A stretch of DNA of 64,000 bases, taken from the NCBI RefSeq assembly GCF_031769215.1, contig NW_026781971.1, forward strand, positions 434,001 to 498,000, read 5' to 3'. This document shows positions 3,370 to 41,005 of the stretch, piece by piece. The stretch's first letter is position 1. The number at the start of each line of letters is the position of its first letter. A program made the translations under genes and the position numbers. The stretch is from Ylistrum balloti (taxonomy: Eukaryota). Below the pieces are notes generated by a model. It was not told where the DNA came from. It made no database searches and was given only the letters and a program-made list of their open reading frames with translations.

Positions 3370-6083
3370 CACCTGTAGAGAGGTCACGTGATACTTCTGT
3401 TGTTGAATATAGTTAGGCCCTCGGCAGACATGGAAGATGTCTTTTTTCGACAAACAATAATATAAACCAAGCTAATAATAACACCATCTACAATTTTTAT
3501 ATTTGAACTCACTGACACTTTCATATGTGTTTTAAAAAATCTATCCTTGGAATCCTACATATGGAAAATTGACATCCATGACTCCGGGACGACATTTTGT
3601 CCCTAATGACCTTTTATCTGTTGACGGGCCGTTAAGAATGTAATAATGATAATAAAGAGACGAAATTTGATGCATATCGTATCTAGCATTAAGCGAAAGA
3701 CTCAAGAAAAAAAATTCCTTCTAGGTTTTTCCTTTCTTTAATATTTTTTTTCTGAAATAGTTTATATACAATTTCAGTACACATTGAAATACTAACACGC
3801 TGTGTGATGTAACACACCTTGCGAATTTTTTTAAGAAGAAATTTATAAACAGGTATCGAAATGTGATTTAGACTTTTATTTCGATTTTTCTGCAATATGT
3901 TTAATTGATTGACAGTAACAGACTATTAAAGAAGGTTAATTGAACGCGTGCATTCAATTTATACATATAAGTATTAAGTATAAATTATTCTTTCGTAAGT
4001 TGTTTTATGTTCCTTCAGCCATAAAAAGGTAGATAACTCTTCTTGTTTTGTAGTTTCAAACTGCATTTTATCAGCCCTTGTTATTTTACGTGTTCAGTGT
4101 TATTATCAAAATTAGTATACTTATGAAACAGATATATAAATTTTCAAGACATTAACAGAATTATAATAATTATTGGAATAATTAGAACGACAGATTTTAA
4201 ACTTTCATTTTTATATTAAATGTCAGACTTACTTAATAAAGTCTTTCGTTTCATATCTATATCTTAAGACACCGCATTTAAATCTTAGAAACGTAAAAAA
4301 AAATACAAAAAATAATGAATGTCACAGCTTACCCGTGCGCCGTCAATAACAATTTCTTCACTTCCCTTGTCTTTAAACTTCTATGTATGCAGTGCTCTTT
4401 GCAGTAAGACACATGTGCCTTGATTACCGATGATAAATGAGATAAGCGCTCTGCGGTCCGAGCTGGAACAGGCAACACTAAAGTTAAATCTAGAATTACC
4501 AGACAGAAGATCATCTGTCAGATAAATTAGTCTAACTGTAGCATGTATATCTGCATGACTTTGCATGATAATTGATATCTAACGTTAACCTTAAGATCCA
4601 ATCACAGTTTATGTTGATATTTCATTTACAGCAAAATATTTTTTTTTGTGAAACTTTACTTTTAATTTCAAAGACATATATTTGTGGTTTTAATGTATGA
4701 ATGTTTTGATGAATTGTCGAAGATTTCATTAAGCATACCGTTCTTAAGAGTCCAACTCAGACCACGCATGGTTGACTGACCAGATTGAGACCGACCTGTA
4801 GTCTATAGAATCACAGCGGCGCTATTGATCGATCTGTTGTTAATATCTCTGTCAGTCAGTAGAAGCACTATTTGACGGCCATATTACAAGTAACCGCAAA
4901 CATTATTGTACAAACAACATTTCATATCTCAAACAGAGTTTGAAATTTTGCGTTCCTCTAGTAAAGCTATACGGTAACATAGATATATTGTGAAATAATC
5001 ATGATTTTCGTGGCACATCTTCAAAAAATATTACGGCGTGTTTCTGTGAATCTCTATCGATAAATGAAGTGTCTATTTTTTAACACAATTGAATATGTAT
5101 TTAAATGAATTCAGTATACAGTATATCTAGGGTAAGCTTGGATGGATCGAACACGATTTGCGGATGCCCAATTTCATGAATTCAAAGTGTTTGTCTTATC
5201 ATTACTTTGTTGTAAAAACCGATGTTTTCGTGGGACTCAAATTTCGTGGATTATAAAGAAAAACCATTTCATGTGCATTTGATTTCGTTAAAGTCAAGAA
5301 ATTTAACAGTTGTAACAATGGATTGACTTGTTAACATTCGTGTAACTATAATAACCAGGAAATCAAAGCAAATAAATACCTCACTAAAATGAATAATTTT
5401 AAAGTACTGGATAATGTCCCAAGTTACCCGGTGAATCTTTTTCGAGTATGTGTTTCATATTATTTGATATCATTAGCCAAACCTCTGATTTACGTACAAA
5501 TCATCTGTTGGTTACTGCAATAGTAACTACCCAAACTCAAGGCCATCTGTAGTGTAGATATGAGCGAGGTCTTTGCTACATTATACTTTCGTATAATACC
5601 AATAAATAGACAGAATAACACATCAATGAATGTCTACTAATGACAAAATGGAACCAAGCTGTGAAGGAATGTCATTTATTCAAAATAGGTCGTAATAATT
5701 TGTGCAGTTATGTTAAAACGAAATAAGTCTCTCTGGACCAGTTTGTTGTTGCATGTTGTTATTCACAAGGTTGAACAAAACGTTTAGTGGAGTAATATCC
5801 CCAAAATAGATTTCATAATTTGGAAATAAATATCTTTATCGTCTAATCATGTAGTGCAGTCACAAATTGTTCCTTCGATTTCCCTTTAGTTGATATATCT
5901 CATGACTTTAATTTTACATTGAACATTCCTTTCCTTAGTAGTAACATACCAGCTTAACGTATTGTTTTATTTGTTATAACAACTAAAGCTTGAAGCGTCA
6001 ATTATTTACTGTTAATTATGCCAATATCCTTCTTATTAATGTATTGCAGGAGAAGATTATATCGTTATCAAATCTATGCCATT

Positions 6084-9335: not shown

Positions 9336-12300
9336 CGGGGCATCTGTATATTTTTTTAGTCTGTCAATCAAACTATCGAATTCGTTTTCAGAAAAATATT
9401 GTTGATTTTTATTTTGTTGTGATTGTTTAGATCTGACCGTGTTCCCTCTGACGCAGTACTCTGGTCCATTTGCGAATCCTACTTCAAGTCCACGCCTATA
9501 ATAGAATTAGATATATGTTTGTGAAAGTGTCCGTCAACAATACCATAAAATTTAAGTTTGCCTTTATGTATATTTTATCATTAAATTTTGGGAAGGGGCG
9601 GGTTGCGGTATTATGCAGAATCCGGGTAATCTATGTGATCAAACAAGTGGTCACGTACATTTTTCGATTATGAACCAAACCCTAGTCGTTTGCCTAAAAG
9701 GCAACTGTGTGGCCGATATGTGTCATACCCGAATCATACTGCAAATCATTAGTGATTGTTATTGCTAACATAATAAAAGTTTATGAAATGAAAATATTAA
9801 TATTATCATATTGAATATCTCTTACCTTAACATACGACAGCGCTGTTCTGATAACCTCCTGGATACCTCAACTAGACTTCTAGGCTTTCGGCTACTCCAT
9901 AGCTTCTCCGCAACCGCTGAACCACGTGGCCTAGACAAAGTAAACGATCTAAATATGATACGATATTACTACTTAGCCACAATGACCAGGTAGATACTGT
10001 ACATGGTTTATGAATGAGTGTTAAGGAATTTTGAAATGGAACTCAAAATCGATCAAACAAGTCCAAAACCTAAACAGAAAACCATTCACACAGAGACATT
10101 TGAAACGAACAAGGAGAATAAAACCGTGTGTTCCGGAAGTAAAAGCGTCTTCCGCATCATCGACAACTACCACTATGTAAGTCAGGGTCAATTAAAGTAG
10201 AAAATCAACAAGAGACTAGCGAAAGAATAATCAGAAATATGGAAAGATGGTTGAGGTTAGTTTTCTTTCCTTCTCAATTAATATTGTTTGCATTTGTGCC
10301 AATGTGCACATACAATTCCTGTAAATTTGTATTGATTTTTCGATGTTTTATGCACATGCTCTTTTCGTAAACAGCTAGCGTGTCACCAGCATACTATCCT
10401 GCCGACTCGTCAATCAGTAATATAGACACATACCACAGCATGCTCATCACCATCTCATTGCTGACGTACTCGCCCCAAAGACAGGCCTCTCCACCAAGAA
10501 TCTGAGTACCCTCCATTGCCTCGATTTCTGAGTAATATAAATTTGAATAATTAAAGTAAATTATTTTTGCGTTTTGTTTGTGTTTGTATCCTCCCTCACC
10601 CTTTTTTCAACACGTTTATGAAACCATGAAACGCATAAAAACACGATTCCATCCAATTTTTAAGGGATTAGTTTTGGAGCCCTGAATAATTGCGACTTTT
10701 TCAGTTAAATGCATTTATTGGATGACAATAATGTTGCCACTTAAAGAAATAGTGCAATAAATATCATGATTGTAAATAGAGATACTTGACTAATATATTT
10801 TGGGAACGTGCCATTTGTCAAATTTGCAATGGAGGTCTAATATCATTTTGTTCTGTTGAGAATGAACCATATAAAATATATATAAATACATATATATACC
10901 GTTTGGTTCACAATTGTAAAAGTCCTGCCAGTGAACACCTCCTCGTACATGGTCTAAGTACCAACACGTGGAAAAAATGATGCGATAGCCTTTCCGGACG
11001 ATGGTACCAATTTCGTGAGCATTTGATTTCCACACTTGTATAATTGTGTCTTTTTGGATCTAGAAAATAAAATACACAAGTATTACCAAAAAGCGACGTA
11101 TGAATATTGACTACATGAGACAGAAAAGTGTAAACATCAACCGTTGTGTAAATATTGGCAAACACGACATACAAATATAAGAATGTGATGTACATGTGTA
11201 TATTCTCAACCATGCGACAATTCGAATGACCTATAACATATCATACCTGTTAAACATCGACAGAAGCTGCTGTGGTGCAATCCAAGTAACATTAATGAAA
11301 TTCTTGTGAAAAAATCAACCTTAGATAATGCAAGGTGCATGTCTACCTTTCTTTTGATAAATACAAAACAATTACTATCTTATCACTTCTAACAAGAAAG
11401 ATATCAGAAATTACTATTGTAATGCTTTATTTTGTATGTATAAGTATTTGGTATGATAAACAGAAATCATATCTGAGTTTAAGTGTTAGACTTACGTTTG
11501 CTCCTTGTTGTAAACCATCCTGCCACATAATGACATCTAGGCCGACCTCACGGTCACGTGCAATCACATCTAATTTATCTTTTAATCTGTAGACAAAGAG
11601 AAATATCATCATTAGCAGCGGCAGCAGAAAAAATACATTCCTGTTTTGATTGTTGCATCAGTAAGACAAATAAATCTGCAATAAGATAAAAAAACAAAGC
11701 TAAGAAACTTAATTGTTATGATCCAGACTACAACTGCGGGTATTGTTAATCTTACCTGTTGTTGAAATAATCCCAGATATATGCCGGAAGAAGTTCATCT
11801 ATCTTTAATGAATTTATAATCTTGTGCAGTTTTCTGAAAGCAGAATATTTCAGTGTTGGACATTTGAAATGGATATGTTAAAACATTATTATTGCATATT
11901 GGTGTCGCTATCGGTTCTTTGTATGATTGTATTAAATGTATATTGTCACTAATTATGATGTCACATTTAAGATTCTGCAAAAGACATACACATATCGCCT
12001 GTCAATATGAATTTTGAACTAGAATTAATTAAACTGCATCATACAGCCGTTTCGTCCTTCTAGAACTCGTCAGTGATGCTAAGTGCATTACTTTTACCTT
12101 GTAGCGATAAAGGAAGTAAAACTATGGTCAAAATATCAAAATCTCTCCAATAACACCAATAAATTTAGTAACCTTAAGCACATGTGTATATATTTTGAAT
12201 CTTGCCACTAATTTAGTGGAGACTAGCACTGTCTACCACCTGAAATATCGACGGTTATACAAAAGACACACCTATACTGAAATATAATACATCAATTTAA

Positions 12301-15300
12301 TATCCGTTATCATCGGAATTGCTTGAAAGTGCTCGTCATATGTCTAATGATTACCTTCATTCTTTCATACTAAGTTATTCTGACGTGTTATCAAGTGACA
12401 TTTGTTCATCGTTTATAGAAATCGAATACCAATATATATGTTATCTAATAAAAAGTTATTTCTACGGTAAAATAAATGCCAGTAACAGTAATTAAATAAC
12501 TTTCCATGTATGTTATAAGAATATTTATTGATAGGTATTAATAGATTAGTTGAAAATATACCAACATGGTTCTTATGGCTCAGCAAGTCTATAACATCAT
12601 ATTGGGCATAGTACAAAATGATTTGTGTAGCATAGGTGTGTCTATTAGACTTACTTGATTTTGTTGCGTAAGGCAGCTGACATTTGATTTTCAGTTAGAA
12701 GGTCTGTGATATTCGTAGAAGTGGTGTTGTTGGTAAAGTGCGTCGATTTAGATTGCCTTAGCTGGGATTTTAGATTATCTTTGATGTAAAGCGCCCGGAA
12801 TAGCTCTAACACGTTTGGATTTGATTCCCTGAAAACGAGTTCATTAAAGAAAAACATGAACAAAGGCGTACAGGTCAATTGCACCTTTTCATGCAAATTT
12901 AGAGTTAGATACAGTAGAGCCAAACAATAAATGAAATTGAGTCATAGACCTATTTCTTCCCTCTAGGACTCGTCAGAGATGCTGAGAGCCTAAATTTGGA
13001 AGCCTAGGAGGCGACCAAGGAAACTCCAGTGTTCGAAAGCAAGGTCAAAAGCTATGGTAAAATGCAGTAAGTAGATTGCAATTTGAAATACAAAAACTTC
13101 CGAGAATGTGAGCTTATAATCCAAATCGGGTTAAAGAGATATGAACTGTTTACTTACCAACAATTAGTGTTAACTTCGTCACCGCCTAGATGAACAAATC
13201 GATCCCTGAACACATTCGTTACTTCCTTGAGTAGTTTGCTGAGAACTTTGAACACATTTTCGTTGGTAGGATCTAACGGCCCGAGAAATGCTGGCACTGG
13301 TTTGTTATTATGATAGCATTGGGTCAGCAGGCTTGGATAGGAAAGACCCCAGGAGTATGTATGACCTAACGAACACAAGTAACGCCTAAGAAAAATAATT
13401 ACTTGCGAAAAAAATGTTAGCAAGTCATAACTACAAAAGACTATATTATTGTACACAGAGATATCTAAAATTGAGAAACACCAAAATATTTAATAGTAAA
13501 CACGTCTGTTGTGAATTATCGATTTATCAAAACATGGAATTGGTGTTGGCAAAGTTGCATTTTTTGCGAAAATATTGACAGAGAGCGAAAACATTTACGT
13601 ACCAAAAATGCATTCATAGAAATATTGTCAAAACTTGGGTATTCACATTGCGAATAGACTGAAAAGGCAATAAAACATGAAGACGACTTTTGTGCATAAA
13701 CTTGCCTGGTATATCAAACTCTGGTATGACGCGGATGCCCCGGAGACGTGCATATTCTATGACGTCATTGATGTCATCACGTGTGTAGACCATGTTTGGA
13801 TTGTATGCCCCCTGTAGTAAAAAATATCAAAAAATTATAATTTCGATTGTTTAATAAAACTAAATATCGAAACCATGGCTAAAAGCAATTGAAATATGAT
13901 GTTGTTTTCTGGTCTTCGACAAATTACTTTACTTAGCTAAATATTACTCTAACTGAAAAACTCTATTATGGGGAAACGACACTTACTCTTAACAGAAAAA
14001 TGAACAAATATTCTTGACCGTGCAAAATTATATCAAGCTCCGTAAACGTTTTACCTAATGGTTTTGGTCCTTTAGTTCTTATTACCATACTACACATCAT
14101 GTATTGTTTCATAGATCTGAAAGCTTTGTAAGGTAACCTTTTTTTACATACCAATGAATTAAGGCACCATAACCTAAGTTAGAAATTACATTTTGTAATT
14201 CTATCCACCACATGTGCGTAAGTTTATAGATATTATTGTTATGTGTAAATATTACTTTTTCGTCCAATGTCGATGTTAGGTGTTCCATTTCCGATTTATA
14301 TTTGTCTTTGTATGTACATGGGAAAGGAATTAATATAAGCTTTAAGCTTGTTTTCCCATCCCATAAGATTAAATGTACCTGTCTGTAACTAAATGCTAAT
14401 TATTGAATAAAATATTGTTTAAACTAAGGTATGTAAAATACAGTTCTCACCTTTTGACTGAAGTCAGGAAATTCGTCACTTTTGTAAGGGAATGACTGGT
14501 CATCTGTCAGATGCCAGTGTAAAACGTTCATCTTGTTTATCGCCATTCCTTCCTGTCAGTACAAAGTCAACAATATAAACAAGTACATTATTTGTATCCC
14601 TAGATGGTTTATGGGTTGCTAAAAATACGCACAGACATGCTTGGACAATGTATAATTCATGATGTCTCTATTCATATTTCGTTTAAACGTTGATTAAGTT
14701 AAACAAAAACTCCGTGAGGAAGATATTGACGACTCAATCTGCCTTATCATATATTCATAAATTTAAAAAAAAATTACAGATCATTGAATAATTTGCATAA
14801 TTATTCTAGTTTTATTTTCGATCTACTTTATTTTCGAACATCGAAAACTTACTGCTACTTTAATAAATCTTCTATGACTAAAACCTTACACATAGTTCGT
14901 AGAACTATTTCCACTATTTTAAAAATAGGTGATTTTCTTATCTTTAAAACTTTTTTTAAAAAAATAATCAAATAAATAATACTAGATTAAAAAAACTGGT
15001 AACCTACCAAGACGTCAAAGAGGACATCCTTCTGTATGTAATGTCGTGAAGAATCTATTAGAACTCCCCTGTGAGGAAACCTGGGGAAGTCTTCAATCAT
15101 TGTCTCCTTTATAAAGAACTGAATTTAGACAGATAGTATACAATTATATCAAGTCCCATTCAAGTTTTCTGCGTCATTAGATAATAGTTAAATTCATTAT
15201 CCAGCTCGTTGTGTGATTTTGAAATTGGGTTTTACGAAAGGTTTTTTTTCACTTTTTGTCTTTTTCACACTCTTAAAAAATATGTGATTTAAGACGTTTA

Positions 15301-18860: not shown

Positions 18861-18903
18861 GCATCATACACTGTTTCGTCCTTACAGGACTCGTAAGTGA
18901 TGC
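18861..18903 (-). ncRNA. Hammerhead ribozyme copy with a core substitution
   Basis: GCATCA-CTTACGA-GTCC-TGTAA-GGAC-GAAAC-AGT-GTA-TGATGC; G5>U in the core, stems I and II perfect. Confidence 0.75.
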
Positions 18904-19942: not shown

Positions 19943-19975
19943 CTGACAAGTCCTAGGGGGACGAAAAAGTCAGTT
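19943..19975 (+). ncRNA. Degenerate hammerhead core remnant
   Basis: CTGACAA-GTCC-TAGGG-GGAC-GAAAA; G8>A, stem II intact, stems I and III not recognisable. Confidence 0.5.
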
Positions 19976-32497: not shown

Positions 32498-33625
32498 GTT
32501 GTGTCCTCTTTTCTTCACACCGGTGTTGACCAAAATATGAAAATGTGCTCCCTATATATATGTACGTCAAATTTCACAATACTCCGTTAAGTTACCACAA
32601 CTGATATTCCAAAACTTTGTACAGTTTTGTCAGTTTATAACATTAATGTACAGCTATTCAGTGACGATCGTCTCAAATGAATGTTTGAAATATATTTAGT
32701 TCGATTTTATATATTTTTTCAGATATTTTCGGAATGTTCAAAGTAGAGACAGAAATAATCTTCAAGGTAGATACTAGATTGTCCTCGGTGTAATACCAAT
32801 TGCTATGTATCATCTGAGTTATTGATTTTGATAAATATATCACGTGGTTTTAATAATTAATTCTGTCGAACGAAATAGTTCTGGGAAAGAATATCTGAAT
32901 AGTCACATAAACATACAACAAGAACGTCACGCCGTGCTAGGCATATGTATTGTCTACAATGCAGTTGTAGTGTAAATATATGTATCCCTGAAATGGAGCA
33001 TTTTTATCCACGGTTGGATGAACTAGGAACGAACGACAGATCACCAGATAACTAACTGAAAATTATTTTACACTTTTGAAAATACCTCTCTCAGGTTAAT
33101 ACAATCCAAAATTCACTTCAGTCAAAATAAATAATTGAAAAGAAAATAATGTTATATTCATGGAAGAACACAATCATTATATATTTCAATCAAATCACTA
33201 TGATTCCCAAATGGAAAAAAAACAAAGCTGAAATGATTACATCCTCAATGAAAGGTGTCTTCATTGAATCAAAATTGATATGGAAATAACTTGGATGATG
33301 AAATTCCTAAAACTGAGTTCGGGTTACTAGGGAGATGGTGGTTTTTTTTTTTTTTTGTTTCATGACTCACAATTGATTGTCGTAAGAAACCAATTATCGA
33401 CCTTCCCACAGTTTCCACTATAATACGGTCTAGTGTACTAGATACCTAGAACATCAGGACAAGTTCATAGATCAACACAGGAATAATTTATCATGGATAA
33501 TGATTAATGTCTTTTTACAGGCGTACGAAAAGATCCCGTGCATTACAATAGTGGATGGAGTGAATAGCGCCTTTCTAAACAAATCTAGCATTTGATACAG
33601 TAGAGAAAGACAATGAACTATACTT

Positions 33626-33700
33626 CATAATACAGTTGTTTTGTCTTTGTTGGACTAGATGACCAGGGCCTAAATTTTAAAAACCTAGGAGGCGACTGAG
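33626..33700 (-). mobile_element. Hammerhead-family element with deleted core
   Basis: cataatacagttgttttgtctttgttggact aligns to the family consensus catcatacagctgtttcgtccttctaggact, lacks the CTGACG box, then shares the flank seen at 12984-13015. Confidence 0.55.
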
Positions 33701-34399
33701 AGAAACAACCAAAACGATTTCTTTACGAATCATACTATGAAACAGACATTCACTTAAACGAGCATCAATGTCGATAAAAAATATGGAAGTGTTAGATTCA
33801 TGTATGCAAATTGTAGAAGTTTTATGAACGAACTCAATAATTTCATATTAAAAATCATTCTTCGTGTTACTATTCAGGAACACCTGGTCTTTGCCTCCTT
33901 TCACTTTTCATGAGTTTCCATGTAAATCCTTCTTTTATTCATATTTCGTCGAATTGAGATTGAATTCTGATTCCGTGAACATGTTTTTATTTCCTTTGTT
34001 CTTTCTGTCCTTTTCAATCCTGGTCAACCAGTGCTCGACAGAGTTTAAAAGGTAAAAATATTAAAAAGTCATTGCCAACTAAAAGCTGCGTTCCGACACA
34101 GTTACTGCAGCAAAACGGCAAAGTGTAGATGGAATCTGATAACTACTACTAGTATACAGATTCATGAAATATTTATTGCAATGATAAAAAGTACAATACA
34201 TCGATTATTGTAAACATGAAAAAGCTGATTTTACATTTTCTTTGATCATAAACACATGATACACACACACATAACCCCCACATAATGACACTGTCATTTT
34301 TCATCCCTGATTGAATAATTCCTTCCTTAAATAATTCTTATCTGATAATGATTACCTATCTCGATATTGAAATTTCTTTCGATCAAAGTTATGCCCTTA

Positions 34400-34846
34400 G
34401 CAACACTGACGAATCCCGGATGGACGAAACAGCTGTATGATACAGCATTACTTACGAGTCCTAGAAGGACGAAACATCTGTATGATACAGCATCACAGAC
34501 GAGTCTTAGATGGATGAAACAACTGTATGATAAAGCATCACTGACGAGTCCTAGAATTGCGAAACAACAGTATGGTACAGCATTACTGACGAGTCCTAGA
34601 AAGACGAAGCAGCTATATGATACAGCATTACTGATGAGTCCTAGAAGGACGAAACATCTGTATGATACAGCATTACTGAGGAGTCCTCAAAGGACGAAAC
34701 AGCTATATGATACATCATTTCTGACGAATCCTAGAAGGATGAAACATCTGTATGATACAATATTAGTGACGCGTCCTAGAAAGACGAAACAGCGATATGA
34801 TATAGCATCACAGACGAGTCTTAGATGAACGAAAAAACTGGATGAT
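34400..34846 (+). ncRNA. Tandem array of ten 45-bp minimal type I hammerhead ribozyme units
   Basis: Cores start at 34406 and recur every 45 bp to 34811. Consensus GCAT(C/T)A-CTGACGA-GTCC-TAGAA-GGAC-GAAAC-AGCT-GTA-TGATACA: CUGANGA box, 4-bp stem II, GAAA box, palindromic stem III ACAGCTGT, GUA cleavage triplet, short stem I. Confidence 0.88.
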
Positions 34847-35559
34847 TCATACATCAGTTCATTGTATTTACTGTATCTTATCCACATTTGTATCTAATGG
34901 TGATATTTATCTGTGTGTCATTTGTACAATCTCCATCCTTTAACTTATTGTTATGTGTTAAAATATTCTCAATACCTCAACTAACCATTGCCGTAACTAT
35001 TACCTGACACAATTTCTCCGTTATTTAACATTTCTTTTATGACCCCCCCCCCTCCTTCTGCCACACGGAGGGTCAGCCATACTCTTTATTCAAATGTCAG
35101 AGTTTCACCTCAGGATGCTTCAAACAAAATTTGGGGAAAAAAATTCTATACAAAGGATCTTGTTTTAATGGTAGATATATTGTATGAAAATAATGAGGAA
35201 GCTGTACAGTCGTCATAATTTTCTCATTGAGAAATATTCTATTTCTTTGTGCGATATGAAGCTGGACGTTTTTGATGCTCTTTAATTTGAATGTTTGTGC
35301 TGTTGAGAATGGGACATTACTTACTTAGATTAACCAAGATTTACACGGCGGGTGTCGTCGATGAACCAGAAGACGCTTACTCTTCAGGAGTCTCCGTGTA
35401 AATTTTTCTTTTGTTTATAGTTTGTTTGTATGTTGGTATATTCTTGTTGCATTTTTTCCAGAACCAACTCCTCAAACCTCCTGGGCCGAGACCCTTTATT
35501 TATATAAAACTGGTTCCCTTTCCATCAATGATAGTGCTTCCCCAAAGGATACTTCTGAC

Positions 35560-35830: not shown

Positions 35831-36750
35831 TTGATAGCTGTTATCCCAGAAAATCTTGTCTATTATGATGACGAGGCTGTAATATAACAACACTTTGCTG
35901 GCATCCTTTACTACACAATTCCTAAACATTTTCAGTTAAATACACCTATCGAGCCGAAGTTGAAATATTTGGTTTTTATCAAGATGGTGGTCATATTGGA
36001 TTTCTTACTAGCCCAAAACAATAACGACACCACTTGGTTTAGGCAGTCCCAGGATCATTCCTGCCAATTTTAGCTAAATCCAACCTTCGGAACTTGAAAC
36101 TTGCAAAATGTGAAAAAATCAAGCGAGACACACAACAGTGACTACAAGTCAAATAAAGAACCAAATGCAGTTTACACGGAGACCTTTCAAACAGTACAAA
36201 GAGAATAGGACAAGGTGTCACGGAAGGGTTAAAACGTCGTCTGTTTCACTAACGACATCCGCCATGTAAAATTTTGATCAACAACAACTAAACCACTAGT
36301 TACACTAATGAATATCAAACACATCTAACTTCATCAATAGAATGTTATGACGACCATAAAATTCCTTATTGTTTCACTTGAATTTGTTTTGTTTTATCTG
36401 TCAACTGTAACTATATTTTATGGTAATCTAGAAATTTGGAAGTATTCGGGTAAATGTCACACTGATGAAAAAAAAGAGAAAGTTATATTTTTGCTTAAAA
36501 GGATATCTGTGATAATTTATTAAAAATGTCGCGTTACTCTACAAGAAACACTGAAACATTCCATAATTGAAAATACCTAGTGACATTGTTGATAATGTGA
36601 TTTGATTCAAAAAGTGCAACGCATCTTATACATATGGGACAGTACGATGATAAGGCAAGGACAAAGCCCATTGTAATGGATAAGACTGGTCAGAAACAGG
36701 CTTAATGCTATATCAACAGCGATCATAAATCAAGCCATTTGATAGATTGC

Positions 36751-38258
36751 ATACACCGGCTCGAGTAGGAATCGGTACATACACCGGCCCGAGTAGGAAT
36801 CGGTCCATACACCGGCCCGAGTAGGAATCGGTTCATACACCGGCTCGAGTAGGAATCGGTTCATACACCGGTCCGAGTAGGAATCGGTACATACACCGGC
36901 CCGAGTAGGAATCGGTTCATACACCGGCCCGAGTAGGAATCGGTTCATACACCGGTCCGAGTAGGAATCGGTCCATACACCGGCCCGAGTAGGAATCGGT
37001 ACATACACCGGCCCGAGTAGGAATCGGTACATACACCGGCCCGGGTAGGAATCGGTACATACACCGGCCCGAGTAGGAATCGGTACATACACCGGCCCGA
37101 TTAGGAATCGGTACATACACCGGCCCGGGTAGGAATCGAGCCATACACCGGTCCGGGTAGGAATCGGTACATACACCGGCCCGATTAGGAATCGGTACAT
37201 ACACCGGCCCGAGTAGGAATCGGTACATACACCGGCCCGATTAGGAATCGGTACATACACCGGCCCGGGTAGGAATCGGTCCATACACCGGCCCGAGTAG
37301 GAATCGGTACATACACCGGCCCGATTAGGAATCGATACATACACCGGCCCGAGTAGGAATCGGTTACACCGGCCCGAGTAGGAATCGGTACATACACCGG
37401 CCCGGGTAGGAATCGAGCCATACACCGGTCCGGGTAGGAATCGGTTCATACACCGGCTTGAGTAGGAATCGGTTACACCGGCCCGAGTAGGAATCGGTTA
37501 CACCGGCCCGATTAGGAATCGGTCCATACACCGGCCCGAGTAGGAATCGGTACATACACCGGCCCGAGTAGGAATCGGTACATACACCGGCCCGAGTAGG
37601 AATCGGTACATACACCGGCCCGGGTAGGAATCGAGCCATACACCGGTCCGGGTAGGAATCGGTTCATACACCGGCTTGAGTAGGAATCGGTTCATACACC
37701 GGCCCGAGTAGGAATCGGTTACACCGGCCCGAGTAGGAATCGGTACATACACCGGCCTGAGTAGGAATCGGTTACACCGGCCCGATAAGGAATCGGTCCA
37801 TACACCGGCCCGGGTAGGAATCGAGCCATACACCGGTCCGGGTAGGAATCGGTTCATACACCGGCTTGAGTAGGAATCGGTTACACCGGCCCGGGTAGGA
37901 ATCGGTTCATACACTGGCCCGATTAGGAATCGGTTCATACACCGGCCCGAGTAGGAATCGGTTCATACACCGGCCCGAGTAGGAATCGGTACATACACCG
38001 GCCCGGGTAGGAATCGGTTCATACACCGGCCCGAGTAGGAATCGGTTCATACACCGGCCCGAGTAGGAATCGGTCCATACACCGGCCCGAGTAGGAATCG
38101 GTACATACACCGGCCCGAGTAGGAATCGGTTCATACACCGGCCCGAGTAGGAATCGGTTCATACACCGGCTCGAGTAGGAATCGGTTCATACACCGGCCC
38201 GAGTAGGAATCGGTACATACACCGGCCTGAGTAGGAACCGGTTCATACACCGGCCCGA
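36751..38258. repeat. 28-bp GC-rich minisatellite, ~54 copies (ATACACCGGCCCGAGTAGGAATCGGT(A/T)C)
   Basis: Direct reading; some units carry short deletions. Confidence 0.97.
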
Positions 38259-39224
38259 GAAGTATTGAACCACTCATCGCGGATCTTCACTGTCATGATG
38301 CTATAAGATATGACTTTCTGAATACTGAGTGATACATACGTTTTATACATCATTTTTCTTGATTGTGAATGTGACAATGAAAATGTAATGCTAGTCACTG
38401 AAACACCAGACAAACCTTGCTCTTTATAAAAAAAATACCGTAGTAACAAGGTAATGTCATAGTTGTGTGATAAAAATCATCTGAACAAAAATAAACATAC
38501 GTAAATAATGGATAAAGAAGACATTTTCTTTTGTTTTTCTTCACTACGGATGGGTAAACCATGCCATTAAAGTTTATAATGCATGGCCATCTCGAACACT
38601 AGGAGTCAATAGAGAAAAAGAACAGTCTGTCTTTCCAGTTTTGTGATTATGGATCAAGTATATTCACTTTTCATAGAGCTATGAAAAGAAAATCAATAGG
38701 GTCTCCTTTAAAAATTAACATGTATAGCTTTTTTCTCTATATCATAGTGGATATCTTATGGAAATTGGTCGAAATCATGTTTCCCATGTCAATGGCTGTT
38801 CCAAACGTTATCTCTTATCATGTATACTCCACTTAGCGGAAACAAAAAGAATATCATGAGTTGAAAATTGCCACCACAAGGTGGCAAGTCTGTACCAGCT
38901 TGATATAAAGATAAGTAACCTTTAAGTTCCCAAACGATATAAATTTTAGTGTGAGGAATCAAGACAATCTGAATCAATGCCATAGTGTATTTTTACAAGA
39001 CGGTTCAGGTATTCTTACCTACCTAGGGAATTACTACACTCGCTGCCACCAGACATGTACCGTGACCATGCACTCTCTTACCCTGTATCACAGGGACCTG
39101 AGAATTCATTATAATCAAGTATGGATTTATCATCGTGCGCTAAAACATTTTTTGAAAGTTTTCGGGGTCAAGGTCTAAATAAGCAAGGTTTCCTCACAGG
39201 ATTATAAACAAACATCTATATAGA

Positions 39225-39860
39225 TATTCTAGAGAGAAAGAGAAGAGAAAATAGATATTCTAAAGAGGAAATAAAGATATTCTAGAAAGAAGAAAAAATA
39301 TGTATTGTAGAGAGAAGAAAAAACAGATATTCTAAAGAGGTGAGAAAATAGATATTCTAGAGAGAGAAGAGAAAATAGATATTCTAGAGAAGAGAGAAGA
39401 GAGATATTATAGAGAGAAGAGAAAATAGATATTCTAGAGAGAAGAGAAAATAGATATTCCATAGCGAAGAGAAAAAAGATATTATAGAGAGAAGAGAAAA
39501 TAGATATTCTAGAGAGAANNNNNNNNNNNNNNNNNNNNNNNNNNNNNNNNNNNNNNNNNNNNNNNNNNNNNNNNNNNNNNNNNNNNNNNNNNNNNNNNNN
39601 NNNNNNNNNNNNNNNNNNNNNNNNNNNNNNNNNNNNNNNNNNNNNNNNNNNNNNNNNNNNNNNNNNNNNNNNNNNNNNNNNNNNNNNNNNNNNNNNNNNN
39701 NNNNNNNNNNNNNNNNNNNNNNNGAGAAAATTGATATTCTAGAAAGGTGAGAAAGCATGTATTTTATAGAGATGAGAAAACGTGTATTCTAGAAAAAGAG
39801 AAAATAGATATTCTAAAGAGAAAAGAAAATATATATTCTAGAGAGAAGAGAAAACATGTA
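39225..39860. repeat. Purine-rich ~26-bp minisatellite spanning an assembly gap
   Basis: AGAGAAGAGAAAATAGATATTCTAG units on both sides of the N run. Confidence 0.9.
39519..39723. other. Assembly gap (N run)
   Basis: Ns in sequence. Confidence 0.99.
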
Positions 39861-41005
39861 TTCTCTCTCTCTTTCTCTCATATATATATATAAATATACA
39901 CTGTTTATATTGTCTGATATTGAAATAAGAACATAATGAGAAGAATATTAAGGTTTGAAAAAAATTGTCTGAATCTCACATCGAGCATTGCATTAGTTAT
40001 ACTAAATATTACGCGTGAAATAATTATGTAGAAACTGAAAAACAAATAAATAAAACGTTTTGAAGAAAGCGTAACTGTCGTGTTTGTAAAATGTCCGAGT
40101 TGTTGAATAAACGATGTTTATATACCAAAGCGTTTTATTTTCATAAAATGCTTGAAAGTTCGTCGTTAATGGAATCCCATTAAACATGTCTATAATGTCC
40201 ATTGTTTATTCATGAAGTGAAACATATCGATAATTTTTCATAACAGACATTCCTGTATGTTTTCGTTTCATCAACAGCCGATATCTAATTTCCAATATAT
40301 ACAACAAACAAAACATGCCGAGTTATTGAACCTGGTACAATTCTTATTTTTATCATTTTCTGTGCAGAGAAATAATTATCTTTGATTGCTTGTAGCATGT
40401 TTTGTCTTGTAGGAAACTTTGGCTACACCATGTATGTATCATAACTTTTATGTTCCGGGGATATGTCAATGAGTACATGCAAGTCTTTGATATTGGACCA
40501 CATAAAATTTCCAATGCGTGGCACATATAGATTCATTATCAGACTCGTATCTATTGATCGTTCTAGTTCGAAAAGTATCAATAATCCCATTGTTAACAGA
40601 TGAAATCCGATATATCATTTACTGTGTAGTCGTTGACATACAGCTTGTGGTTATAGTGATTTTTTCCCTTCATGTAATGTTTATTACGCACCGTGGTTTA
40701 TTGGTGCAATTTCGCCTATCGTACCTCTCTATCCAATTATAAATAGTTGGAGGTAAAATTTAACTTAATTTCTAATGAAGTTTATTATGTCATTGAGTGT
40801 AATCAGACTGCCGAGTTGGAATTTCAGTGCATAGGAAAACATGAAATAGTTTTAACTTTAAGCTTCATAAATTAAAATCAATATGTAGCTGATTTCATAG
40901 GATCAATCATTGCTGAGTGATCATTAGTGAATTTATCTGATTTATTTCGCGATGTGTGCTGTATTTCATGTCTCTTTATATTGGATAACTAGAGTTTTGG
41001 TCTCA

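What the first reader, a model, noticed from the sequence alone, without database searches (positions are those of the whole stretch)
34400..34846. A minisatellite whose 45-bp unit is exactly one hammerhead ribozyme (10 head-to-tail copies)
Seen: ten cores at a strict 45-bp period; the consensus has CUGACGA, stem II GUCC/GGAC, GAAA, palindromic stem III ACAGCUGU, a GUA site and stem I. Unit 6 (34631) is fully canonical (predicted cut after 34662); unit 8 has a compensatory A-U stem II base pair; units 1 and 7 are one mismatch off. Established: minimal type I hammerheads with a palindromic stem III occur in Penelope-like elements and metazoan non-LTR retrozymes and cleave as dimers, with retrozyme monomers usually about 150-400 nt including cargo. 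Inference: this is a cargo-free limit case, a polymeric ribozyme that could cut a transcript into 45-nt monomers or multiples, possibly circularising, and the array may have arisen by reverse transcription of a concatemer.
Basis: partly seen in the sequence, partly recalled or inferred. Interest (0 to 1): 0.92.

Follow-up and report, generated by a model that had tools for sequence, protein, structure and literature searches.

The report
Decayed hammerhead-ribozyme minisatellite in mobile element
This 440-base repeat really is ten back-to-back copies of a 45-base self-cutting hammerhead RNA motif, but it is one worn-out copy of a repeat found all over this invertebrate genome, sits inside a small mobile element, and seems to have grown as ordinary repeat DNA.

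Summary
Observation confirmed: window 34405-34846 holds 9.8 copies of a 45-bp unit, and the unit is a hammerhead ribozyme (HHR). The scan had already found this same satellite on other pieces of this genome; my tests agree with those notes.

- **This copy is decayed.** Its units stay below Rfam's cut-off (best 27.2 bits against 34). Five of ten catalytic cores are mutated. Only the junction of units 6 and 7 (cut after 34662) still looks competent.
- **The family is a true hammerhead.** Better-kept arrays elsewhere pass Rfam's cut-offs as type I (single unit) and as type III (across a unit junction). The consensus junction folds into a complete hammerhead.
- **It is not cargo-free.** Most sampled arrays, this one included, lie between the same two arms of a 310-400 nt dispersed element with thousands of copies. 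Solo-hammerhead copies of that element lie in this window.
- **Growth looks DNA-level.** Core and non-core sites mutate equally, and core-killing variants spread in blocks. Reverse transcription of a concatemer is not supported.
- **Not tested:** expression and cleavage, because no RNA data were available.

I found no description of a spacer-less 45-bp hammerhead unit in the papers I could search.

The parts
34405..34846 (+). 45-bp tandem array, 9.8 units; each unit is one hammerhead motif with no spacer
   Evidence: TRF; unit table; core status
34625..34668 (+). Best single-unit hammerhead (unit 6, type I reading); predicted cut after 34662
   Evidence: RF00163 full-length match, 27.2 bits, below the gathering score of 34
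34654..34706 (+). Junction of units 6 and 7 read as a type III hammerhead. Site GUA 34660-34662, core and stem II of unit 7, 4 contiguous helix III pairs next to the core. The only junction here that still looks competent
   Evidence: its lowest-energy fold is not the hammerhead
34430..34480 (+). Junction of units 1 and 2 matched by Rfam's type III model, but the core of unit 2 is mutated (CUUACGA)
   Evidence: RF00008, 25.4 bits, gathering score 48.5
34354..34404 (+). Remnant of the host element's left arm, with an internal deletion of about 45 nt; it ends in the helix I 5' strand
   Evidence: flank alignments
34847..34932 (+). Degenerate last unit plus the host element's right arm, ending in TGTACAATCT
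   Evidence: flank alignments
33529..33851 (-). Inverted, degenerate copy of the same element with a single broken hammerhead
   Evidence: inverted repeat; alignment to the element model
12898..13054 (-). Copy of the same element with one hammerhead (core 12952-12976) between the left and right arms
12036..12079 (-). Solo hammerhead of another copy of the element; that copy has the terminal-repeat motif at both ends
18873..18897 (-). Solo hammerhead-like core (CUUACGA, core mutated) with a left-arm end upstream
19943..19967 (+). Degenerate solo hammerhead-like core

Best explanation
The array is a decayed member of a genome-wide minisatellite. That minisatellite arose by tandem duplication of the 45-nt hammerhead module of a small non-coding mobile element.

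The element is about 310-400 nt long, with a left arm, the hammerhead, a right arm and about 40 nt of terminal redundancy. It resembles a retrozyme or a Penelope-dependent element.

The ancestral element carries one canonical metazoan type I hammerhead: helix I of 6 bp, helix II of 4 bp, and a short palindromic helix III that needs a partner. Because the duplicated unit is exactly the ribozyme, the helix III palindromes of two adjacent units pair in cis and helix I closes as a local hairpin. Each unit junction then forms a complete type III hammerhead.

Shown: the anatomy, the family membership of well-kept copies, and the nesting in the element. Inferred: arrays grow and turn over mainly as DNA, by slippage or unequal exchange, without selection for catalysis.

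The copy in this window is mostly dead. At most the junction of units 6 and 7 could still cut a transcript, after 34662. That any array is transcribed and cuts itself in the animal is inference only.
For: - Period and copy number.
- Hammerhead core, helices and cut sites per unit.
- Sub-threshold Rfam matches here. Matches above the gathering score in better arrays: RF00163 35.8-37.8 bits against 34, and RF00008 50.3 bits against 48.5.
- The consensus junction 53-mer has the three-way hammerhead junction as its lowest-energy fold: -17.5 kcal/mol, z = -2.97, 1 of 200 shuffles as good.
- The family is genome-wide, with 2129 first-look candidates and arrays of up to about 92 units.
- The same arms flank 10-12 of the 19 arrays and the solo copies. 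The arm family has 3457 first-look candidates at about 72-75% identity.
- Terminal redundancy and unit length.
- Private substitutions per site: 0.037 in the core against 0.032 elsewhere, p = 1.0.
- Core-killing variants are clustered in blocks: C427 cleavage-site A to G in 16 of 30 units, z = -3.3; C564 C3 to A, z = -3.6; C167 G5 to U, z = -3.3.
Against: - No RNA data, so transcription and cleavage are untested.
- At positions 28, 39 and 41 the same two alleles recur in many arrays and are interspersed almost at random. Simple stepwise DNA duplication does not predict this.
- Variants that became the majority of an array largely avoid the core (1 of 27). This could mean some selection on source copies, although shared descent inflates the count.
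- Seven or eight sampled arrays lack a recognisable left arm. I read this as 5' truncation or decay, but it could mean that arrays move on their own.
- No autonomous partner element was identified.
Confidence: 0.72

Rival explanations
1. Functional polymeric ribozyme, or ultra-minimal retrozyme. Arrays are transcribed and cut themselves into 45-nt monomers or multimers, which are ligated or circularised and reverse-transcribed. Arrays are then built and spread at the RNA level.
For: - The consensus junction is a complete type III hammerhead above Rfam's cut-off.
- 51% of sampled junctions are complete.
- Near-random mosaics of two alleles at positions 28, 39 and 41 in many arrays would fit assembly from a pool of variant monomers.
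- Some arrays lack a left arm.
Against: - Most arrays sit at one fixed point between the same arms.
- Dead-core variants expand in blocks.
- There is no excess conservation of core sites.
- Arrays at different loci share no unit order: C881 matches the window array equally well in two registers, 88% and 87%.
- No RNA evidence is available.
Confidence: 0.1
2. The duplication happens during reverse transcription of the host element. The enzyme slips or switches template on the palindromic, hairpin-rich hammerhead, so new insertions are born with several units. DNA-level turnover follows.
For: - Very many independent element copies carry arrays at the same internal site.
- Arrays without a left arm but with a right arm look like 5'-truncated insertions of RNAs that already carried arrays.
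- The unit contains a strong alternative hairpin, positions 28-33 with 37-42.
Against: The same hairpins would also promote replication slippage in DNA. The block pattern of private variants shows growth after insertion in any case. Nothing here tells the two apart.
Confidence: 0.15
3. An ordinary satellite that resembles a hammerhead by chance.
For: The window's own units are below Rfam's gathering score, and substitutions are spread evenly.
Against: - Family members pass two curated Rfam cut-offs with full-length alignments.
- All invariant core bases, three helices and a GUA site are in the consensus.
- The motif count is 13 against 0.01 expected.
- Solo copies sit in a retroelement-like unit.
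Confidence: 0.02

Closest known systems
Metazoan non-LTR retrozymes (Cervera and de la Pena 2020, PMC7229834), e.g. the mussel Mytilus galloprovincialis repeats of 350-390 bp
   Same: - Canonical type I hammerhead with a 6-bp helix I, a 4-bp helix II and a short palindromic helix III.
- AT-rich non-coding unit of a few hundred nt (the host element here is about 310-400 nt).
- Thousands of copies, in a genome that also holds Penelope-like elements.
- A 30-nt stretch of the left arm weakly resembles the cloned mussel retrozyme (z = 3.6-4.5 in 3 of 6 copies).
   Different: - In published retrozymes the tandem unit is the whole element (170-400 nt; the smallest shown is 174 nt). Here the tandem unit is the 45-nt ribozyme alone, and the host element is dispersed rather than tandem in my sample.
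- circRNA expression is not shown here.
Minimal hammerheads of Penelope-like elements (Cervera and de la Pena 2014, PMC4209133; Lunse, Weinberg and Breaker 2017, which I could not read)
   Same: Type I topology, a palindromic helix III that requires dimer formation, massive copy numbers, and frequent tandem or inverted arrangements.
   Different: - The Penelope-like family sampled here has a different hammerhead: a bulged base before helix II GCCC/GGGC and an ACCGGU palindrome.
- The satellite's arms match none of 25 Penelope-like loci.
- In Penelope-like elements the hammerheads are kilobases apart in the pseudo-LTRs, not head to tail.
Classical hammerhead satellites: newt satellite 2, Schistosoma Sm-alpha, cave-cricket pDo500 (from my own knowledge and the reviews PMC6765202 and PMC7761336)
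   Same: Tandem genomic repeats that each encode a type I hammerhead. Newt and avocado sunblotch viroid RNAs cut through double-hammerhead structures formed by two copies (Forster et al. 1988, cited in PMC4209133).
   Different: Those units are about 330-500 bp with non-ribozyme sequence between the hammerheads. Here there is no spacer, so the same RNA reads as type I within a unit and type III across a junction.

Membership tests
Hammerhead ribozyme, type I (Rfam RF00163) | Invariant core CUGANGA ... GAAA ... UH | tested here: met
   Intact in units 1, 4, 6, 7 and 8 of this array and mutated in units 2, 3, 5, 9 and 10. Core plus stem II are intact in 376 of 532 units sampled genome-wide.
Hammerhead ribozyme, type I (Rfam RF00163) | Score at or above Rfam's gathering cut-off (34 bits) | tested here: not met
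   This window's units score 27.2, 21.8 and 15-17 bits. The satellite family does meet it elsewhere: 35.8-37.8 bits for dozens of units in L019, L012 and L002.
Hammerhead ribozyme, type III (Rfam RF00008) | Helices I and II closed, helix III open, score at or above 48.5 bits | tested here: not met
   The window junction 34430-34480 scores 25.4 bits. Junctions of the C564 array reach 50.3 bits, and the consensus junction's lowest-energy fold is this structure.
Hammerhead ribozyme (any type) | Site-specific self-cleavage | not testable with these tools
   Needs in vitro transcription or RNA end mapping. No RNA run was available.
Metazoan non-LTR retrozyme | Tandem repeats of 150-450 bp, each with one type I hammerhead and non-ribozyme cargo | tested here: not met
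   The tandem unit is 45 bp with no cargo. The host element is the right size, but no second hammerhead lay within 1.5 kb of any of the 19 arrays, so element multimers were not seen.
Metazoan non-LTR retrozyme | Expressed as small circular RNAs | not testable with these tools
   The only run found behaves like genomic DNA contigs.
Metazoan non-LTR retrozyme | Co-occurrence with Penelope-like elements in the genome | tested here: met
   51 GIY-YIG matches. A 751-aa ORF carries RVT_1 and GIY-YIG and is repeated every 5.36 kb.
Penelope-like element pseudo-LTR hammerhead | The hammerhead lies in the repeats flanking an RT/GIY-YIG ORF | tested here: not met
   No similarity between the arms or unit and 25 Penelope-like loci. 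Those loci carry a different hammerhead. Only a sample of families was examined.

The most novel reading that the evidence does not exclude
The 45-nt unit is a self-sufficient RNA replicon-like module. Array transcripts cut themselves at every junction into 45-nt RNAs. These are re-ligated in random order or circularised, then reverse-transcribed by Penelope-like enzymes. That would build arrays from pools of variant monomers, which would explain the random two-allele mosaics at positions 28, 39 and 41. If so, this would be by far the smallest retrozyme-like element known.
Probability: 0.07. Interest if true: 0.85.

Novelty: new variant of a known kind. Interest (0 to 1): 0.42.

Why it matters
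Hammerhead-bearing repeats have been known in animals since 1987 and are now seen as retrozymes that make small circular RNAs. In every published case that I could read, the repeat carries a few hundred bases of other sequence.

A satellite whose unit has shrunk to the ribozyme alone shows that the hammerhead module can expand on its own. The same RNA then reads as type I within a unit and type III across a junction. It also offers a natural test of whether dimer-dependent hammerheads become efficient when a partner is supplied in cis, and a possible natural source of 45-nt RNAs.

This particular locus adds little. It is a decayed copy in a repeat-rich region, and the scan had already met the family on other pieces of the genome.

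Tried and rejected
- **Rfam at gathering threshold over the whole window:** no hit.
- **Expression:** the single run found (X1) has flat depth of about 11x on the unique flanks and behaves like genomic DNA contigs. It says nothing about RNA.
- **Same hammerhead in autonomous Penelope-like elements:** a strict motif scan found none. Rfam found none at E up to 1 in 50 kb. BLAST of the arms found none. Only a different hammerhead was seen.
- **Higher-order repeat periodicity:** mean differences are flat across lags 1-10 in this array and in large arrays, so there is no fixed multi-unit period.
- **Whole-array homology between loci:** rejected, because C881 matches the window array in two registers equally well.
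- **Selection on the core:** none in private substitutions.
- **Homology to the mussel retrozyme Mg353:** only a weak 30-nt similarity. The full 353-nt construct has no reference and was not typed in, so the full comparison was left out.
- **Lunse et al. 2017 (PMC5785218):** not held.
- **ORFs near the array:** no Pfam family at or above its cut-off with a matched stretch. The 153-aa ORF across the array and the 239-aa ORF at 36730-37449 are artefacts of repeats.
- **Organism:** earlier notes call it a scallop or other bivalve. I did not verify this.

Full report
**1. The observation.** Tandem Repeats Finder reports one array at 34405-34846, with period 45, 9.8 copies, 80% matches and no indels. 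Cut into register, each unit reads A-CUGANGA-GUCC-UAGAA-GGAC-GAAA-CAGCUGU-A-UGAUACAGCAUU. A 25-nt core pattern allowing 3 mismatches is found 13 times in the window against 0.01 expected, and nine of these lie in the array.
- Unit 6 has an imperfect helix III palindrome (ACAUCUGU).
- Half of the units (2, 3, 5, 9, 10) are mutated at invariant core bases, and unit 4 has lost helix II.

**2. Is it a hammerhead?** No Rfam family reaches its gathering score anywhere in the window. A permissive scan of the array alone gives full-length matches to the 45-position type I model RF00163: 27.2 bits for 34625-34668, then 21.8 and 15-17 bits, against a cut-off of 34. It also gives a full-length match to the type III model RF00008 across a unit junction (34430-34480, 25.4 bits against 48.5). 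By itself this locus therefore fails the curated test.

The family does not fail it. The assembly (648.5 Mb, 1372 contigs) gives 2129 first-look candidates for the array. Long arrays lie on dozens of contigs, the longest sampled having about 92 units. In three better-kept arrays Rfam reports 43 matches above the gathering score: type I at 35.8-37.8 bits for single units, and type III at 50.3 bits for 51-nt stretches spanning a junction.

**3. Anatomy of the family.** I took 532 units from 19 arrays. The consensus is ACUGACGAGUCCUAGAAGGACGAAACAGCUGUAUGAUGUAGCAUC, with every position 87-100% conserved except 28, 38, 39 and 41. Its parts are:
- helix I, GCAUCA with UGAUGU (6 bp);
- helix II, GUCC with GGAC, closed by loop UAGAA;
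- helix III, reduced to the palindrome ACAGCUGU;
- the cut site, GUA.

This matches the canonical metazoan type I architecture described in PMC4209133: 6-bp helix I, 4-bp helix II, and a 1-2 bp helix III with a palindromic loop that acts as a dimer.

Because the units abut, the palindromes of two neighbours can pair in cis (8 bp) and helix I closes as a local 5-bp hairpin. The 53-nt stretch from position 25 of one unit to position 32 of the next has this three-way junction as its lowest-energy and centroid fold: -17.5 kcal/mol, z = -2.97, with 1 of 200 shuffles as good.

By simple criteria, 376 of 532 units keep core plus helix II, and 245 of 479 junctions are complete hammerheads.

The subfamily in this window (A38, C39, U45) has a weaker helix I and a stronger competing hairpin, positions 28-33 with 37-42, which hides the cut site. 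Its idealised junction folds at -12.7 kcal/mol as a hammerhead against a lowest energy of -15.8. None of the real junctions in the window folds as a hammerhead. Only the junction of units 6 and 7 combines an intact core, full helix II, a GUA site and four helix III pairs next to the core. This array has 0 of 9 complete junctions, the lowest count among the 19 arrays.

**4. Context: the array is nested in a mobile element.**
- Ten of 19 arrays share a conserved left arm and twelve share a conserved right arm ending in TGTACAATC.
- Here the left arm survives only at 34354-34404, with an internal deletion, and the right arm lies at about 34847-34932.
- The distal right-arm motif recurs 180-280 nt upstream of the hammerhead. 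A full copy is therefore about 310-400 nt with about 40 nt of terminal redundancy. This recalls the 30-40 bp tails at the ends of Penelope-like insertions (PMC8557442).
- The left arm alone gives 3457 first-look candidates at about 72-75% identity, so the family is old and abundant.
- Copies with a single hammerhead between the same arms lie in this window at 12898-13054 (-) and around 12049 (-). There are degenerate ones at 18873 (-), at 19943 (+), and an inverted one at 33529-33851 (-).

The 45-bp array is thus an internal expansion of the element's ribozyme module, not a free-standing cargo-less element.

**5. How arrays grow.**
- Substitutions private to a unit, measured against its own array's majority, are as frequent at non-CpG core sites (0.037 per site) as at other non-CpG sites (0.032); Mann-Whitney p = 1.0.
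- Variants that inactivate the ribozyme reach high frequency inside arrays and lie in contiguous blocks. In C427 the cleavage-site A is changed to G in 16 of 30 units (runs z = -3.3). Other cases are C564 C3 to A (z = -3.6), C167 G5 to U (z = -3.3), and C42 G12 to A and A9 to C.
- Blocks are what local DNA duplication (slippage, unequal exchange) produces, and they show that growth does not need catalysis.
- There is no fixed higher-order period.
- Arrays at different loci share no unit order: C881 matches the window array at 88% and 87% in two registers.

These points favour DNA-level growth over reverse transcription of a concatemer. I cannot exclude that the first duplications happen during reverse transcription of the host element.

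Two things do not fit neatly:
- Positions 28, 39 and 41 carry the same two alleles in many arrays, and the alleles are interspersed almost at random (z between -1.2 and +0.9; notebook entry).
- Variants that became the majority of an array fall almost entirely in helix I (21 of 27) and only once in the core. This may reflect selection on source copies or merely shared descent.

**6. Relation to Penelope-like elements and retrozymes.** The genome holds Penelope-like elements. There are 51 GIY-YIG matches and a 751-aa ORF with RVT_1 and GIY-YIG repeated every 5.36 kb on C422. One family carries a hammerhead just downstream of the ORF and again in an inverted copy. It is a different one: CUGAUGA, a bulged A, helix II GCCC/GGGC, GAAAC, and palindrome ACCGGU. 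The satellite's unit and arms match none of 25 such loci.

The host element resembles published non-LTR retrozymes in size, composition and hammerhead type (PMC7229834). A 30-nt stretch of its left arm weakly resembles the cloned mussel retrozyme Mg353 (z = 3.6-4.5 in three of six copies). The full 353-nt comparison was left out because that sequence has no reference.

In my sample the element is dispersed, not tandem, and no circular RNA could be looked for. I therefore do not file it as a retrozyme; it works like one, or derives from one.

**7. Expression.** The one public run found (X1) gives flat depth of about 11x over the unique flanks and very large summed depth over the array. It is evidently genomic DNA of another individual. 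That confirms high copy number only. Transcription, cleavage and circularisation remain untested.

**8. Surroundings.** The array lies in a repeat-rich, AT-rich stretch. Nearby are the inverted element copy 750 bp upstream, a high-copy repeat at about 35206-35539, a 28-bp satellite at 36750-38259, and 25-bp repeats at 39239-39864. No nearby ORF has a Pfam match at or above its cut-off with a matched stretch, and the long ORFs are artefacts of repeats. On the minus strand of the array only chance-level snoRNA-like matches appear.

**9. Literature and novelty.** Already known:
- hammerheads in satellites and tandem repeats of 150-450 bp;
- dimer-dependent type I hammerheads with a palindromic helix III;
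- minimal hammerheads in Penelope-like elements (PMC4209133, PMC7229834, PMC6765202, PMC7761336, PMC8557442, bioRxiv 10.64898/2026.07.22.740005).

The smallest retrozyme shown in PMC7229834 is 174 nt. Searches for a hammerhead satellite in bivalves or scallops returned nothing relevant. Lunse et al. 2017 could not be read. A spacer-less 45-bp hammerhead satellite that passes both the type I and type III models therefore appears undescribed in what I could search. It is a new variant of a known kind.

The scan itself has reported the same satellite on at least eight other pieces of this genome. My independent tests agree with those follow-ups. Earlier notes call the organism a scallop or other bivalve; I did not verify that.

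**10. Verdict.** This copy is decayed. 'Cargo-free' and 'made by reverse transcription of a concatemer' are not supported. Interest is moderate for the family and low for this locus.

Noticed in passing
window 36750-38259: A GC-rich (about 57%) 28-bp satellite, 54.6 copies at 90% identity, with consensus CATACACCGGCCCGAGTAGGAATCGGTA. It creates spurious ATG ORFs of up to 239 aa on the minus strand.
   Followed up: partly
window 39239-39864: Purine-rich 25-bp tandem repeats (AGAGAAGAGAAAATAGATATTCTAG) in two blocks, next to a very AT-rich stretch with GC of 0.15 at 39500-39999.
   Followed up: no
window 35206-35539: A second very high-copy dispersed repeat. The summed contig depth is about 70,000 against about 11 on the unique flanks, with many loose ends at 35222-35247 and 35383-35389 that mark its borders. 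Its identity was not determined.
   Followed up: no
L055:6990-7040 (+) and 4180-4230 (-); also L046, L041, L047: A Penelope-like element family carries a minimal hammerhead unlike the satellite's: CUGAUGA, a bulged A, GCCC-AAUUAGAA-GGGC, GAAAC, CGGUA. It is present downstream of the GIY-YIG end and again in an inverted copy. Rfam does not detect it at E up to 1.
   Followed up: partly
L051 (G000:C422:243000-252999): Penelope-like elements lie in head-to-tail tandem with a 5.36-kb period. Each has a 751-aa RT/GIY-YIG ORF preceded by an overlapping 332-477 aa ORF with no Pfam match.
   Followed up: partly
19 sampled arrays (L001-L030), unit positions 28, 38, 39, 41: The same two alleles recur at these positions in many independent arrays and are interspersed almost at random within arrays, unlike private variants, which form blocks. 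The changes at 38, 39 and 41 are all transitions. Unexplained.
   Followed up: partly
It is on the same strand as those exons.
   Followed up: no
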